A program made the translations under genes and the position numbers. The notes under the pieces are model-generated. The model was given only the letters and a program-made list of their open reading frames with translations, did no database searches and was not told the DNA's origin. Of a DNA stretch of 64,000 bases, positions 888 through 39,225 are shown piece after piece (position 1 is the stretch's first letter; every line of letters starts with the position of its first letter). Location: IMG/VR virus record IMGVR_UViG_3300017917_001342, positions 124,001 through 188,000 of that record; one strand, written 5' to 3'.

Positions 888-1097
888 ATGTCAATGCCAC
901 AATTTAACTGTGATAGAGAATGGTGGTCTACTTTAACCAAAGAAGAACAAGATCACTGGCTTGATTTTGCAGAAAGTTGTGGTGCGCCTAGAGAACCGTT
1001 TTTAGTTGATCGCAATCCGGATTATCCAGATTTGGTTTGCATGCCCTGTGTTACTGTTGATATAGACGATGACGAATTAATAGAATTACTCCCGTAG
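888..1097 (+). CDS. small acidic hypothetical protein
   Basis: AGGAG RBS; 3' end overlaps the 5' end of tRNA-Glu. Confidence 0.5.
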   Translation: MSMPQFNCDREWWSTLTKEEQDHWLDFAESCGAPREPFLVDRNPDYPDLVCMPCVTVDIDDDELIELLP

Positions 1098-1165
1098 GAC
1101 TACTCGGTGATGGTCGCTGGCCTTTCAAGTCGGAGAAATGGGTTCGAAACCCATACGGGGGACCA
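1089..1165 (+). tRNA. tRNA-Glu(TTC)
   Basis: CTGGC-CTTTCAA-GTCGG, T arm TGGGTTCGAAACCCA, ACCA. Confidence 0.85.
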
Positions 1166-1177
1166 AAATTACTATGT

Positions 1178-1335
1178 GCCTGCGATGGCGAAATTGGAGA
1201 GACGCACCGGCAGGTGAGGCCGGCGGGCTCTAAGGAGTAGCAGTGAGCGAATGGGAGTAGGTCCGGAACGAAACCGCTAGCAATAGAATGCGAAAGTTAC
1301 CCCACATGTAGGTTCAAATCCTACTCGCAGCACCA
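1178..1335 (+). ncRNA. CCA-ended tRNA-like RNA with 84-nt variable region
   Basis: CTGCGA/TCGCAG acceptor, D-like arm, CCGGC/GCCGG stem, GTAGG-TTCAAAT-CCTAC, ACCA. Confidence 0.65.
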
Positions 1336-1361
1336 TTATTATTGTCGTGTAACCTCTGTAC

Positions 1362-1441
1362 GCTGTCGACATACGGGGGTATAGATAGGCTAGCGCAAGC
1401 CTGAAAGTGTATGTGGGTGCAACTCCTACCACGACAGCCAA
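1362..1441 (+). ncRNA. D-armless tRNA-like RNA (copy 1)
   Basis: GCTGTCG/CGACAGC stem, CATAC/GTATG arm, GTGGG-TGCAACT-CCTAC T-like arm. Confidence 0.5.
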
Positions 1442-1631
1442 ACAAAAGGTTCGAGAATGAATGAAGAATTATTAAAACAAGCAGAAATTGCATTGGGATC
1501 GTCATTCCGTCTTATGGAACAATATTACTTCTTAAAAAAACGCGGCTGGCATTGTTATTGGAATCTAGATACTGCTATTGCGCATGCAGCAAAAAATGTT
1601 AAATCATTGATTTGGTGTTAATACCAATCAT

Positions 1632-1746: not shown

Positions 1747-1814
1747 GCTCCTGCAAGAGGATATACAGTTGTTCGAGCGACTGTATGTGGGATCGTTCCC
1801 CACCAGGAGTATCA
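1747..1814 (+). ncRNA. D-armless tRNA-like RNA (copy 2)
   Basis: GCTCCTG/CAGGAGT stem, 9-bp ATACAGTTG/CGACTGTAT arm, GTGGG-ATCGTTC-CCCAC. Confidence 0.5.
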
Positions 1815-5518: not shown

Positions 5519-5593
5519 GGGTTTGTAGCTCAACGGTAGAGCAGGTGTCTCTAAAACATCGAGGTGTGGGTTCGAATCCCATCTTACCCGCCA
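5519..5593 (+). tRNA. amber suppressor tRNA (CTA)
   Basis: GGTGT-CTCTAAA-ACATC; acceptor has two U.U mismatches; GCCA. Confidence 0.8.
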
Positions 5594-7530: not shown

Positions 7531-7612
7531 GCTCACGTATCCCCCTCCGCTACGAACGGAGAGTCAGGTAATTGGATGGAAGATGGGGGTTCGAGTCCCT
7601 CCGTGAGTACCA
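7531..7612 (+). tRNA. atypical D-armless tRNA-Arg(ACG)
   Basis: GCTCACG/CGTGAGT, CTCCG-CTACGAA-CGGAG directly after a 7-nt linker, 23-nt variable region, T arm, ACCA. Confidence 0.7.
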
Positions 7613-8428: not shown

Positions 8429-8539
8429 GGGCTGTTACGTCAAACGGACAACACTGGGGCCTGTGTAATACCAAGACAGTAATGTCCTCTGGAGTCAGAT
8501 AACCTTGGGATATCGGTTCGATCCCGATACAGTCCACCA
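8429..8539 (+). ncRNA. 111-nt CCA-ended tRNA/tmRNA-TLD-like RNA with G3.U70
   Basis: GGGCTGT/ACAGTCC-ACCA, ATCGG-TTCGATC-CCGAT, two internal hairpins. Confidence 0.65.
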
Positions 8540-24463: not shown

Positions 24464-24540
24464 GGTTCCGTAGCTCAGTTGGATAGAGCAGGGAACTTCT
24501 AATTCCAAGGTCGAGGGTTCGAATCCTTCCGGGACCGCCA
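24464..24540 (+). tRNA. tRNA-Arg(TCT)
   Basis: GGAA-CTTCTAA-TTCC, GCCA. Confidence 0.92.
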
Positions 24541-24919: not shown

Positions 24920-24957
24920 GCAGTGGGTCGCAGGTTCGAGTCCTGCAGGGACCGCCA
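24915..24957 (+). pseudogene. 3' half of the disrupted tRNA-Arg(TCT)
   Basis: TCTAA-GCAGT-GGGTC-GCAGGTTCGAGTCCTGC-AGGGACC-GCCA. Confidence 0.75.
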
Positions 24958-26923: not shown

Positions 26924-26998
26924 GTCGCGTTAGCAAAACGTTAATGCGCTGCCCCGCAAAGGTAGAGGACTGTGGTTAAATTCCCAGACGCGACTCCA
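26924..26998 (+). tRNA. tRNA-Cys(GCA), divergent
   Basis: GTCGCGT/ACGCGAC-TCCA, CTGCC-CCGCAAA-GGTAG; D loop lacks GG. Confidence 0.7.
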
Positions 26999-29039: not shown

Positions 29040-29920
29040 CACGATATTAACGTTGTGAAACGTGGATGTTGTGTTTACGCATTGGGGGTTTAGCCTCAAC
29101 AGGATAAGTGCAGTGATGCACCCAAAGCTAGAAAGCCTACATACTAGCGCCAGCAGTGGTCCATCTAAACAAGCCTGAACTAGACTTGACTCGGGTTAAA
29201 CCGAAAGCAAGTCCCGTCCGTAGAAAGGCGGTAGGCAGTAAGTTAGGAATAGTGTCCGAAAGGATAGTTGCAGAGCCAGTCGGTGAGCGATAAGAGGGTT
29301 GGCGCCCAAACACTGTTCAGCCAAACTAACGAATGCTGAAAGTTAACAGGTAGGTACAGAGTCTGAGCCCGCAAGCAAAGGCATGGTACCATTTCGAGAG
29401 TGGAAGGGTTAGGCCCCGGATACTTGAAGAAACACTGATTAGTCCGCAAGACGAAAGGTATGAGGTGTGCTGTATTGGGTATGTCAAAAGCATATTCAGC
29501 AGCCGAGGTAGCACATCTCGGATAGGTTGCAAAATCAGCTAATGGTAAGCTAATTCCCTTCTAAGGAATCGATTGCAGGTTCAACTCCTGTTTTTGAAAA
29601 ATGCAAAGTCTACCTCGGTATGTAGTGTAAGGTGTCAAATACTTGAGGCGCAAGCCAATCAAGTTCAACAAAGCTCGCAAGGCAGCGTTGATTTGTGCTA
29701 GAAGTTTCGTAGCCCGCAAGGCTTAATGGTCCGCAAGATCAACGGAAAACAAGGTGCAGAATAGCTACATACGACGAGTCTACTGCCTGACTCTAAAAAC
29801 GGCGACACTGTTAATGGACTAGGTTACCGCAAGGGACTTAGTGGATGTCGGAAGAAAGCGGCTCGCAAGGCTGGCAATAATGTCCGAAGCGTTAACATCG
29901 AACGTGTAATCTCAGCGTTT
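29040..29920 (+). ncRNA. GOLLD-like large ncRNA (5' boundary uncertain)
   Basis: ~0.9 kb without credible ORF, at least 9 GCAA/GAAA-capped hairpins, GGTAGGTAC..GAGTCTGAG, GAGGTAGCACATCTC and terminal GTAATCTCAG blocks recalled from GOLLD; tRNA-cluster context. Confidence 0.6.
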
Positions 29921-38965: not shown

Positions 38966-39225
38966 CTGTTGCATTTTTAACTGCACTGTGCTATAGTGAG
39001 TTATTGATTATGCGAAAAAAGGTTCGTAGTAGCGGCTAGTAATCCAGGAACCTTGCGGCAAATAAGGTGAGAACGCCCGCCTCACACACCAGCAATGGTA
39101 AAGTAGCGAAAGCGAAGAGATGTAGGAATCTTGTCTATATGGCAAGTTGAAAACAGGGACCCTACTATTTGCCAATACCCATTAAGATCGTCTGTAGGCT
39201 AGCCAAATTTTTAAAAAGGTGTGTT

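What the first reader, a model, noticed from the sequence alone, without database searches (positions are those of the whole stretch)
1178..1335. 157-nt CCA-ended tRNA-like RNA with an 84-nt branched variable domain and a non-canonical anticodon loop
Acceptor (C1.C72 mismatch), Leu/Ser-type D loop and T arm are intact. The 7-nt anticodon loop AGGTGAG lacks U33 and the normal purine 37 context, and 1224-1307 forms extra hairpins with GCAA/GAAA loops. It looks like a chargeable or EF-Tu-binding shell carrying a cargo domain, not a decoding tRNA (inference).
Basis: partly seen in the sequence, partly recalled or inferred. Interest (0 to 1): 0.7.

Follow-up and report, generated by a model that had tools for sequence, protein, structure and literature searches.

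The report
Phage tRNA-like RNA with giant arm
A 519-kb freshwater phage carries, inside its tRNA gene array, a conserved gene that is a leucine tRNA remodelled so that it can probably still be processed and perhaps charged but very likely cannot read codons, with a fast-evolving 73-base extension on its extra arm; its role is unknown, like that of the two small RNAs in phage T4's tRNA cluster.

Summary
Its variable region is 84 nt and its anticodon loop is AGGUGAG. The shell derives from tRNA-Leu: covariance-model hits, the D arm, A73, and an insert placed exactly at the tip of the variable arm. In two metagenome loci and one strain rebuilt from read differences, the shell is almost invariant (5' part 50/50; the 3' changes include one compensatory T-stem pair). 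The insert differs by 11-28%. It is therefore a selected gene, not a relic, and the shell, not the "cargo", is the most constrained part. No single internal deletion gives a normal anticodon loop. C1.C72, A32, G33 and G38 occur in none of the phage's 55 ordinary tRNAs. Best reading: an RNase P-processed, CCA-ended, possibly LeuRS-chargeable, non-decoding tRNA mimic (inference). No RNA data exist, so expression, charging and function are untested. A second conserved tRNA-like RNA (1343-1440) sits 7 nt downstream. The pair resembles T4 rnaD/rnaC in arrangement. Verdict: new variant of a known kind, moderate interest.

The parts
1057..1086 (+). sigma-70-like promoter match (TTGATA-18-TAGAAT) just upstream of tRNA-Glu; possible start of the tRNA-Glu/A/B transcript
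   Evidence: 10 of 12 matches; promoter-like sites are not enriched over shuffles, so this is weak
1089..1165 (+). canonical tRNA-Glu(UUC), 13 nt upstream of A; identical in variant loci
1179..1335 (+). element A: 157-nt tRNA-Leu-derived, CCA-ended tRNA-like RNA gene
1179..1185 (+). acceptor 5' strand; C1 faces C72 (mismatch); pairs 2-7 are Watson-Crick
   Evidence: no 1:72 mismatch in any of the 55 ordinary tRNAs
1188..1205 (+). Leu-type D arm (3-bp stem, 12-nt loop, G18G19 at 1196-1197); 3 differences from the phage's tRNA-Leu(UAG) D arm
1207..1223 (+). anticodon-position arm: 5 G/C pairs, 7-nt loop AGGUGAG (A32 G33 G34 U35 G36 A37 G38); invariant in all variants
1225..1227 (+). 5' strand of the basal variable-arm helix (GGG), pairs with 1301-1303
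   Evidence: corresponds to the GCC/GGC variable stem of tRNA-Leu(UAG)
1228..1300 (+). 73-nt expansion in place of the variable-arm tetraloop; single copy; 11% (L022/L023) to 28% (X10) diverged; conserved blocks UCCGGAA, GCAA, GAAAG
1229..1255 (+). hairpin Pa within the expansion: 7 standard pairs kept in 4 variants, 2 with changes on both sides
   Evidence: P about 0.01-0.02 under a random-substitution null, but the hairpin was chosen after seeing the data
1301..1303 (+). 3' strand of the basal variable-arm helix (CCC)
1308..1324 (+). canonical T arm (G53 U54 U55 C56 A58 C61); pair 1309:1323 changes U-A to C-G in L022/L023
1325..1335 (+). acceptor 3' strand, discriminator A73 (1332), encoded CCA (1333-1335)
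1343..1440 (+). element B: companion 98-nt CCA-ended four-helix tRNA-like RNA, always 7-8 nt downstream of A
   Evidence: (24/24 pairs, 4 compensatory)

Best explanation
Element A is a functional gene for a non-decoding tRNA mimic derived from a class II tRNA-Leu.

Shown. (1) It has a complete tRNA shell: acceptor, Leu-type D arm, 5-bp anticodon-position stem, T arm, A73 and an encoded CCA. (2) The shell evolves as slowly as the neighbouring true tRNAs. (3) The 73-nt segment that replaces the variable-arm tetraloop evolves 3-25 times faster.

Inferred mechanism. It is co-transcribed with tRNA-Glu and element B in the tRNA operon. It is released by RNase P at its 5' end and by the usual 3' trimming at the encoded CCA, and it accumulates as a stable L-shaped RNA. 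The parts it keeps are the ones bacterial LeuRS reads: A73, G18G19, A15/U48 and the T-loop tertiary bases. The parts it has altered, the anticodon and the variable arm, are ones LeuRS ignores. It can therefore probably bind host LeuRS and be leucylated by it. The conserved C1.C72 mismatch and the G33/A32/G38 loop probably keep it away from EF-Tu and from decoding.

Its job would then be done through the tRNA shell, off the ribosome. Either it is a decoy or competitor for a tRNA-handling factor (a synthetase, a modification enzyme, or a host tRNA-directed defence nuclease), or it is a non-ribosomal aminoacyl donor. The variable-arm expansion would be a tolerated, partly structured appendage that diverges quickly. 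I cannot say which partner it serves.
For: Shell geometry and position. Leu ancestry: the best non-self hits of the A model are tRNA-Leu genes (45.5, 39.1, 36.6 bits; T4 tRNA-Leu 40.8 bits); the D arm differs at 3 positions from tRNA-Leu(UAG), and the variable arm C-GGG-[73 nt]-CCC parallels C-GCC-GCAA-GGC.

Selection: the 5' shell is 50/50 identical in L022/L023. The 3' shell is 32/35, and two of its three changes form one compensatory T-stem pair. The insert is 64/72 and the CHAP ORF 83%. Strain X10 has 20 changes in the 72-nt insert against 1 in 83 nt of shell (Fisher p = 1e-6).

Non-decoding: C1.C72, A32, G33 and G38 occur in 0 of 55 ordinary tRNAs of the genome, and Leu and His anticodons are already covered.

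LeuRS logic: PMC9976931. Operon context: 13 nt after tRNA-Glu, 7 nt before B, no + strand terminator. Precedents: T4 rnaC/rnaD in a tRNA cluster, expressed, role unknown; B. cereus pseudo-tRNA.
Against: There is no RNA evidence at all. The three RNA-labelled runs do not hold the locus, and no RNA library on record holds it. Aminoacylation, RNase P cleavage and EF-Tu exclusion are inferences from E. coli rules, and the host is unknown. The D loop is one base longer than in the phage's Leu tRNAs, so the A20a/D-loop geometry that LeuRS needs may be disturbed. The phage encodes no LeuRS and no L/F-transferase, so no dedicated partner is visible. The E. coli L/F-transferase preferences are mostly not met (U3-A70, G4-C69). 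Only three independent lineages are available, all of one phage species group. The anticodon loop alone (7 nt) is too short for its invariance to be strong evidence. The fold is not thermodynamically exceptional.
Confidence: 0.45

Rival explanations
1. A is a real decoding tRNA with an odd body. Its anticodon G34 U35 G36 would read His codons (CAC/CAU), or it would act as a nuclease- or modification-resistant backup. The huge variable arm would be tolerated on the ribosome.
For: With the insert shortened, ARAGORN at default stringency calls a tRNA with anticodon GTG in 463 of the 498 products it recognises as tRNAs, out of 1333 tested. Position 37 is a purine. Phage tRNAs with altered anticodon loops that escape host anticodon nucleases are documented (PMC10264068, PMC11555353). 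The phage carries three Rnl2-family RNA ligases, which suggests pressure on tRNAs. From memory, Candida tRNA-Ser(CAG) decodes with G33.
Against: G33, A32, G38 and a 1:72 mismatch are each absent from all 55 ordinary tRNAs of the genome. A canonical tRNA-His(GUG) is present. The body and discriminator are Leu-type, so a decoder would put Leu at His codons. Resemblance to tRNA-His beyond the triplet is no better than to other tRNAs. An 84-nt variable region has no precedent among decoding tRNAs (my knowledge).
Confidence: 0.15
2. The 73-84-nt segment is an intervening sequence removed after transcription by protein enzymes (cut and religation). This would leave a class II tRNA-like RNA of about 85 nt. 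The insert would then evolve fast because only its ends matter.
For: Exon-like shell against fast-evolving insert. In X10 the insert is far more diverged than its flanks, as if it evolved as a separate module. Three RNA ligase genes are in the genome. Other orphans in related phages look like tRNAs with internal insertions (L008a, D).
Against: No Rfam ribozyme or intron family matches even at E<=10, and 73 nt is far below group I size. There is no RtcB. No single deletion restores a canonical anticodon loop, so the product would still be non-canonical. The position at the variable-arm tip is not a known bacterial intron site (my knowledge). The insert keeps conserved blocks and one covarying hairpin. 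There is no read evidence either way.
Confidence: 0.12
3. A is a dead or dying tRNA-Leu gene, disrupted by an insertion and with its anticodon mutated. It would be kept only as a processing (punctuation) signal for the polycistronic tRNA transcript, or not yet decayed.
For: Remodelled or partial tRNA genes are common in this array: a 3' fragment after an HNH-like ORF (E), a D-arm-less copy where L023 has a canonical tRNA-Arg (C), and G, which is absent from L023. Detectors do not call A. There is no expression evidence.
Against: The D arm and anticodon arm, which are not needed for RNase P or 3' processing, are 100% conserved in three lineages while the insert inside the same gene changes at 11-28%. 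P(no change in the 5' shell at insert rates) is 1.6e-7 for X10 and 0.003 for L022. A compensatory T-stem change is present. A and B stay linked while neighbouring ORFs come and go.
Confidence: 0.15
4. One reading: the tRNA shell is only a stable, processable scaffold, and the variable-arm domain is the functional cargo (an aptamer, decoy or guide). Its fast change would reflect an arms race.
For: GCAA and GAAA loop sequences and the UCCGGAA block are kept in all four variants. Hairpin 1229-1255 has two compensatory pairs and no disruptive change. The insert in X10 diverges faster than the flanking ORF.
Against: The insert is the least conserved part. The GCAA hairpin is broken in three of four variants, and the set of insert helices as a whole is not better than random substitution (P = 0.11). 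The fold energy is unexceptional. There is no complementarity to B and no enriched genomic target. A pure scaffold would not need an invariant D loop and anticodon-position loop.
Confidence: 0.1

Closest known systems
Class II tRNA-Leu (bacterial and phage)
   Same: Acceptor/T-arm geometry, 3-bp D stem with a Leu-type D loop (G18G19), A73, C2-G71, a variable arm emerging after position 44, and an encoded CCA like all tRNAs of this phage. These are the best covariance-model matches.
   Different: The variable region is 84 nt instead of about 13-15. The loop AGGUGAG has no Leu anticodon and has G33. There is a C1.C72 mismatch, and the D loop is one base longer.
Phage T4 rnaC (species 1 RNA, 139 nt) and rnaD (species 2 RNA, 119 nt)
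   Same: Two adjacent small RNAs lie directly after a tRNA inside the phage tRNA cluster. rnaC has a canonical T arm next to an acceptor-like helix and an expanded interior. They are expressed but their role is unknown (PMC9697503, PMC3014915).
   Different: There is no detectable homology to A (9.5 bits). B matches the 3' part of rnaC only weakly (19.6 bits), mostly through tRNA-like parts. The T4 RNAs lack an encoded CCA and a recognisable D arm and anticodon arm.
Bacillus cereus pseudo-tRNA 'tRNAOther'
   Same: A tRNA-shaped RNA that does not function in translation and acts as a regulator (PMC3399842, abstract).
   Different: It is chromosomal and of normal tRNA size, with no variable-arm expansion and a different lineage. 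I did not compare sequences.
Phage tRNAs with altered anticodon loops that evade host tRNA nucleases
   Same: Phage-encoded, inside tRNA arrays, with an anticodon loop that departs from the host consensus (PMC10264068, PMC11555353).
   Different: Those remain canonical decoders with U33 and normal size. A has G33, a 1:72 mismatch and an 84-nt variable region.
Bacterial and phage Y RNAs (YrlA) and tmRNA
   Same: RNAs that combine a tRNA-like module with an extra domain. tmRNA is CCA-ended and charged.
   Different: There is no Ro/TROVE protein in the genome. The ends form an acceptor stem, not a Ro-binding stem. There is no tmRNA call, no G3.U70 and no tag frame. The phage has its own separate tmRNA.

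Membership tests
Canonical decoding (elongator) tRNA | Cloverleaf with 7-bp acceptor, D arm, 5-bp anticodon stem with 7-nt loop, and T arm with U54 U55 C56 A58 | tested here: met
Canonical decoding (elongator) tRNA | U33 and usual 32/38 bases in the anticodon loop | tested here: not met
   A32 G33 ... G38. Among the 55 tRNAs of the genome, position 33 is T in 54 and C in 1, position 32 is never A and position 38 is never G. A37 is a normal purine.
Canonical decoding (elongator) tRNA | Paired 1:72 | tested here: not met
   C1.C72; all 55 tRNAs have a standard or G.U pair. The mismatch is kept in L022/L023.
Canonical decoding (elongator) tRNA | Recognised by standard detectors (Rfam RF00005 gathering score; ARAGORN default); variable region up to about 25 nt | tested here: not met
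   only the T arm scores (14.3 bits). ARAGORN calls it only at -ps90 with an 'intron'.
tRNA-Leu as LeuRS substrate (E. coli-type identity set, PMC9976931) | Discriminator A73 | tested here: met
   A at 1332
tRNA-Leu as LeuRS substrate (E. coli-type identity set, PMC9976931) | G18G19 with T-loop U54, U55, C56, A58 (D/T-loop tertiary pairs) and A15/U48 | tested here: met
   G1196 G1197; T loop TTCAAAT; A at 1193; U at 1307 directly before the T stem. The numbering is my assignment.
tRNA-Leu as LeuRS substrate (E. coli-type identity set, PMC9976931) | D-loop geometry including A20a | tested here: inconclusive
   The D loop is 12 nt against 11 in the phage's Leu tRNAs, with the extra base 3' of GG.
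tRNA-Leu as LeuRS substrate (E. coli-type identity set, PMC9976931) | Leu anticodon (NAG/NAA) for decoding | tested here: not met
   The loop is AGGUGAG.
tRNA-Leu as LeuRS substrate (E. coli-type identity set, PMC9976931) | Actual leucylation | not testable with these tools
   This needs a charging assay.
tRNA gene with a self-splicing or archaeal-type intron | Recognisable intron RNA family, and removal yields a canonical tRNA | tested here: not met
   No Rfam hit at E<=10. 1333 single-deletion products gave no canonical U33 loop beyond one-off chance calls.
tmRNA | tmRNA detection, G3.U70, tag reading frame | tested here: not met
   U3-A70; a separate tmRNA lies elsewhere in the genome.
Y RNA / YrlA | Ro (TROVE) partner encoded; 5'/3' ends form the Ro-binding stem | tested here: not met
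   No TROVE match in the genome. The ends form an acceptor stem with CCA.
T4 rnaC/rnaD-type stable RNAs of phage tRNA clusters | Tandem non-tRNA small RNA genes directly following a tRNA within the cluster, with tRNA-like ends | tested here: met
T4 rnaC/rnaD-type stable RNAs of phage tRNA clusters | Sequence or structure homology to rnaC/rnaD | tested here: inconclusive
   The A model scores rnaC at 9.5 bits; the B model scores it at 19.6 bits, above all T4 tRNAs (<=14.2).
T4 rnaC/rnaD-type stable RNAs of phage tRNA clusters | Accumulates as a stable RNA in infection | not testable with these tools
   No RNA run holds the locus.

The most novel reading that the evidence does not exclude
Megaphages of this group carry a set of tRNA-derived RNAs (A, B, C, D, G) that keep the acceptor/T-arm/CCA 'handle' used by RNase P, CCA-adding enzyme and synthetases but are rebuilt elsewhere. 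On this reading A is a leucylatable, ribosome-excluded tRNA scaffold. Its rapidly diversifying variable-arm domain and conserved GNRA-like loop would engage a host factor, for example a tRNA-directed defence nuclease or a synthetase, in an arms race. That would be a new functional class of phage counter-defence or regulatory RNAs, and it would also suggest a role for T4 RNA C/D.
Probability: 0.12. Interest if true: 0.8.

Novelty: new variant of a known kind. Interest (0 to 1): 0.55.

Why it matters
Phage tRNA arrays are usually read as codon supplements or as spares against host tRNA nucleases. Here one gene in such an array keeps everything a tRNA needs to be processed, and probably charged, and has lost what it needs to decode. 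It is nevertheless conserved as strictly as true tRNAs. If it is expressed, it is a natural tRNA scaffold with an insert about five times longer than any variable arm I know of. It would offer a handle on the old question of what the non-tRNA RNAs in phage tRNA clusters (T4 RNA C and D) do. It also shows that standard tRNA finders miss several conserved tRNA-like genes in huge-phage genomes.

Tried and rejected
1. Homologue searches. The pattern 'D arm + free stem + AGGTGAG' in IMG/VR gave only two chance coding hits. A's 3' end gave none. The 17-nt anticodon arm alone gave eight hairpin-only chance hits. B's core gave none. GTDB genomes gave none for A or B. INPHARED phages matched only the flanking tRNAs. 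Only the JGI metagenome scan gave true variants.

2. Relatives reached through the CHAP-domain neighbour (15 loci, 50-72% identity) and through ORF 1457-1621 (3 loci) have no sequence homologue of A or B.

3. RNA evidence. Three RNA-labelled runs hold only cross-matching tRNAs of other organisms, and a second search found no RNA library holding A or B.

4. 'tRNA-His mimic'. A shares CCUG.../...CAG-A and a CGG/CCG stem core with the phage's tRNA-His. However, two tRNA-Thr genes match the acceptor better (11/14 against 7/14) and several tRNAs match the stem as well, so I rejected it.

5. A-B pairing or a genomic target for the loop. Duplex energies equal the shuffled controls, and the complement of the loop is not enriched.

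6. Mobile-element insert. The insert is single copy in the genome.

7. tmRNA-like reading (SD-like AAGGAG plus short frames in the insert). The AAGGAG is destroyed in X10, and there is no tmRNA call.

8. Y RNA: no Ro protein.

9. L/F-transferase donor: no such gene in the phage, and the acceptor does not fit E. coli preferences.

10. The radical-SAM ORF next to A in L022, L023 and X10 is generic, below all curated cut-offs, and absent from this position in the window, so it is not a dedicated partner.

11. ARAGORN mitochondrial/armless models do not call B, C or D.

12. Alternative genetic code: table 11 already gives about 89% coding, so there is no evidence for recoding.
Full report
WHAT IS THERE. 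The window is bases 124001-188000 of a 518,643-bp virus record with direct terminal repeats. The genome is 40.7% G+C and about 89% of it lies in frames of at least 150 codons under the standard code. ARAGORN finds 55 tRNAs and a tmRNA. Nearly all the tRNAs lie on the + strand between 119.6 and 164.7 kb, and all have an encoded CCA. Rfam adds a GOLLD RNA and a skipping-rope RNA.

The finding lies 13 nt after tRNA-Glu(UUC). Read directly, 1179-1335 has these parts:
- a 7-position acceptor (CCTGCGA / TCGCAGC) with six Watson-Crick pairs and C1 facing C72;
- U8 G9;
- a 3-bp D stem with a 12-nt loop containing GG;
- a perfect 5-bp G/C stem closing the loop AGGTGAG;
- 84 nt (1224-1307);
- a canonical T arm (GTAGG TTCAAAT CCTAC);
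- A73 and CCA.

Neither ARAGORN nor Rfam calls it at default settings. ARAGORN calls it only at a relaxed threshold, as Thr(GGU) with a 59-nt 'intron'. The minimum-energy fold is no better than shuffles (z = +0.40).

IT IS NOT A CHANCE ARRANGEMENT. A scanner for 'T arm abutting a 3' acceptor strand plus NCCA, with a complementary 5' strand 95-419 nt upstream' finds 18 hits. All are on the + strand inside the array, against 0-1 in shuffled genomes. I also deleted every internal segment that left a product of 70-100 nt. ARAGORN at default stringency then recognised 498 of the 1333 products as tRNAs, 463 of them with the triplet GTG in the anticodon position. So only the length of the variable region hides the gene from the detectors.

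ANCESTRY. A covariance model built from A and its two metagenome variants (R2) finds canonical tRNA-Leu genes as its best other matches. These score 45.5 bits in a related phage, 39.1 and 29.4 bits in the window, and 40.8 bits for T4 tRNA-Leu. The D arm differs at three positions from the phage's tRNA-Leu(UAG). Where that tRNA has the variable arm C-GCC-GCAA-GGC, A has C-GGG-[73 nt]-CCC. The 'insert' is therefore a 73-nt replacement of the tetraloop at the tip of a class II variable arm, and the basal GGG:CCC helix is kept in every variant. The acceptor is closest to the phage's tRNA-Thr genes (11 of 14 positions), which suggests that C1.C72 arose by a G1-to-C change.

CONSERVATION. IMG/VR and the phage and prokaryote genome collections hold no other copy. 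A JGI metagenome scan returned two loci, L022 and L023. Both have the same gene order and about 83-85% identity in the flanking coding DNA. Contigs of public DNA runs supplied further strains.

Identity against L022/L023:
- 5' shell: 50/50.
- 3' shell: 32/35. Two of the three changes convert T-stem pair 1309:1323 from U-A to C-G, and the third is a T-loop base.
- Insert: 64/72.
- CHAP-domain ORF: 83%.
- The tRNAs flanking A: 97-100%.

In strain X10 the contig carries 19 substitutions and one insertion between 1229 and 1300, and a single change (the same T-loop base) in the 83 aligned shell positions. Fisher p is 1e-6, and the chance of an untouched 5' shell at the insert's rate is 1.6e-7. X10's alignment starts at 1181, so positions 1179-1180 are unknown in that strain. 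The surroundings are fluid. ORF 1457-1621 is missing in strains X5, X8 and X13 and in L022/L023. A 1.0-1.5-kb segment with a radical-SAM ORF sits between tRNA-Glu and A in X10, L022 and L023. A and the next element B stay 7-8 nt apart in every strain and locus examined. The shell, including the odd loop, is therefore under purifying selection like a working tRNA. A decaying pseudogene is unlikely.

THE INSERT. It is single copy and matches no Rfam family even at E<=10. Fifty of its 73 columns are invariant in four variants, which is about what the mean divergences predict.
- Hairpin 1229-1255: all seven proposed standard pairs form in all variants. Two pairs change on both sides (1229:1255 U.G to A-U; 1235:1248 G-C to A-U). 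The remaining changes fall in loops. P is about 0.01-0.02 under a random-substitution null, but I chose the model after seeing the data.
- GAAA hairpin (1290-1297): kept, with one C-G to U.G change.
- CTA-GCAA-TAG hairpin: keeps all three pairs only in the window's copy and loses one or two pairs in each of the other three variants.
- All insert helices taken together: no better than chance (P = 0.11).

The loop sequences are conserved, one hairpin is credible, and the rest is unproven.

CAN IT BECOME A NORMAL tRNA, OR DECODE? No single deletion gives a loop with U33 beyond isolated chance calls, so splicing cannot make it canonical. In the phage's own 55 tRNAs, 1:72 is always paired, position 33 is T (54) or C (1), position 32 is never A and position 38 is never G. 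A departs on all four, and L022/L023 keep those states. All Leu anticodons and His-GUG are served by ordinary genes. I considered that A mimics tRNA-His, because of the shared GUG, the CCUG start and the stem core. Other tRNAs match the acceptor and stem as well or better, so I rejected the idea.

WHAT COULD ACT ON IT. The genome has no class Ia synthetase, no RtcB, no L/F-transferase and no Ro/TROVE protein. It has two CCA-adding-family nucleotidyltransferases and three Rnl2-family RNA ligases. For E. coli LeuRS the review PMC9976931 lists A73, the A15-U48 pair, G18G19 and A20a, and the D/T-loop tertiary pairs as decisive. It states that neither the anticodon nor the long variable arm matters, and that variants lacking both arms stay active. 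A keeps the first set, with an uncertain D-loop geometry because its loop is one base longer. It deviates exactly in the two dispensable regions. This is the main argument that it can still be leucylated by the host enzyme. It is an inference, and the host is unknown. From my own knowledge, a 1:72 mismatch is what keeps bacterial initiator tRNA off EF-Tu.

COMPANIONS. Element B (1343-1440, 98 nt) has a perfect 7-bp acceptor, an 8-bp helix, a 4-bp hairpin, a T arm with the unusual loop TGCAACT, G73 and CCA. All 24 pairs form in three variants and four pairs changed on both sides. Its invariant loop contains CUGUCGA (1363-1369). This reads as a canonical anticodon loop with GUC, and G73 is also the discriminator of the phage's tRNA-Asp genes. 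B may therefore be a D-arm-less tRNA-Asp derivative. That is my inference; ARAGORN's armless models do not call it.

Other orphans:
- C (7531-7612) has the loop CUACGAA (ACG, Arg) but no D arm. It scores 29.8 bits against Rfam tRNA. L023 has a canonical tRNA-Arg(ACG) at the same site.
- D is at 8429-8539.
- E is a 3' tRNA fragment after an HNH-like ORF (24930-24957).
- F is a second CUA tRNA (genome 119680-119754).
- G is a mini tRNA-like element (1747-1812).

Remodelled tRNA genes are thus a recurring feature of this phage group.

COMPARISON WITH WHAT IS KNOWN. The closest arrangement is in phage T4, where rnaD (119 nt) and rnaC (139 nt) follow tRNA-Arg at the end of the tRNA cluster. rnaC has a canonical T arm next to an acceptor-like helix and an expanded interior. 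Both are expressed, and their roles are still unknown (PMC9697503, PMC3014915). The A model does not recognise them (9.5 bits). The B model scores the 3' 95 nt of rnaC at 19.6 bits, above every T4 tRNA, but mostly through the tRNA-like parts. So the analogy is architectural, and homology is unproven. Functional precedents for non-decoding tRNAs exist (B. cereus tRNAOther, PMC3399842). So do phage tRNAs with altered loops that escape host nucleases (PMC10264068, PMC11555353). I know of no natural tRNA or tRNA-like RNA with a variable region of 84 nt; that statement rests on my knowledge and on the review PMC7609411, not on an exhaustive search.

MECHANISM AND CONFIDENCE. Shown: the gene's anatomy, its Leu ancestry, selection on the shell, faster change in the insert, and the impossibility of restoring a canonical loop by one deletion. 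Inferred: co-transcription with tRNA-Glu and B (13-nt and 7-nt spacers, a promoter-like site at 1057-1086, no + strand terminator), RNase P and 3' processing, leucylation, exclusion from EF-Tu and the ribosome, and action as a decoy, competitor or aminoacyl donor. I put 0.45 on 'functional non-decoding tRNA-Leu-derived mimic acting through its shell'. The remainder goes to a true decoder (0.15), an excised insert (0.12, not exclusive with the main model), a relic or punctuation signal (0.15) and a cargo scaffold (0.10).

LIMITS. There are three independent lineages of one phage species group. The X10 sequence was reconstructed from a difference table, not read directly. There is no transcript evidence. 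E-values of my models are rough. Identity rules are taken from E. coli.

Noticed in passing
window 1343-1440: Element B is a 98-nt CCA-ended four-helix tRNA-like RNA, 7 nt after A. All 24 pairs are kept in 3 variants and 4 are compensatory. Its T loop is TGCAACT. The invariant CUGUCGA in its loop, together with G73, suggests a D-arm-less tRNA-Asp derivative. ARAGORN and Rfam do not call it.
   Followed up: yes
window 7531-7612: Element C is an 82-nt tRNA-like RNA with the anticodon loop CUACGAA (ACG, Arg). It has no D arm and a 23-nt variable region, and scores 29.8 bits against Rfam tRNA. L023 has a canonical tRNA-Arg(ACG) at the syntenic site, and this genome has no other Arg(ACG).
   Followed up: partly
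window 8429-8539: Element D is a 111-nt orphan shell (acceptor GGGCTGT/ACAGTCC, canonical T arm, ACCA). It has a GTAA hairpin and what looks like an insertion next to a CTGTG loop. The deletion scan gives ambiguous tRNA calls.
   Followed up: partly
window 24930-24957: This is an orphan T arm + acceptor 3' strand + GCCA with no 5' partner, directly after an ORF with an HNH-like motif. Its 3' strand nearly equals that of tRNA-Arg(UCU) at 24464-24540. It looks like a duplicated tRNA 3' end left by a mobile endonuclease cassette.
   Followed up: no
genome 119680-119754 (window -4320..-4246): Element F is a 75-nt tRNA with anticodon CUA and an unusual T loop (CGCAATA), called only by ARAGORN's -mt mode. 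It is a second amber-reading tRNA beside window 5519-5593. TAG ends only 20 of 316 long frames, but table 11 fits the genome.
   Followed up: partly
window 1747-1812: Element G is a mini tRNA-like element between tRNA-Phe and tRNA-Leu. It has a 7-bp acceptor-like helix, a hairpin with compensatory changes against L022, a T-arm-like hairpin (loop ATCGTTC) and no CCA. It is absent from L023.
   Followed up: partly
window 29462-29918: A GOLLD RNA (234 bits) has a tRNA-Arg(UCU) embedded at 29527-29600. A skipping-rope RNA lies at 39057-39173.
   Followed up: no
window 26924-26995: Rfam calls a tRNA here (46.6 bits) that ARAGORN does not list.
   Followed up: no
window 1457-1621; L019 3842-3990: A 54-aa ORF of unknown family is present here and in X10 but absent from strains X5, X8, X13, L022 and L023. 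Its 65%-identical homologues in L019-L021 are also preceded by an unannotated stretch of about 150 nt with two T-arm-like hairpins ending in CCA.
   Followed up: partly
L023 724-1689 (also L022, X10): A 321-aa radical-SAM protein (CNYRCSYC motif; Pfam PF04055 only, below all NCBIfam cut-offs) ends 12 nt upstream of A in other strains and is absent at this site in the window. Paralogues at 25-28% identity lie elsewhere in the genome.
   Followed up: partly
L008 6243-6270, 9261-9288, 15873-15900: A related 318-kb phage has three orphan T-arm/acceptor/CCA ends without a 5' acceptor partner. They share an upstream motif GGATCA(T/G)T..C.GCAA, and two have TGCAA-type T loops like B. L008 5492-5613 looks like a tRNA with a 47-nt insertion containing its own T-arm-like hairpin.
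   Followed up: no
genome 40389-40859, 68626-69069, 271836-272294, 307125-307493, 398809-399171, about 311343: The genome has three Rnl2-family RNA ligase genes, two CCA-adding-family nucleotidyltransferase genes and a permuted-type tmRNA (tag ANDNVAPSYALAA). The phage tRNA-His has A73 and no G-1.
   Followed up: no
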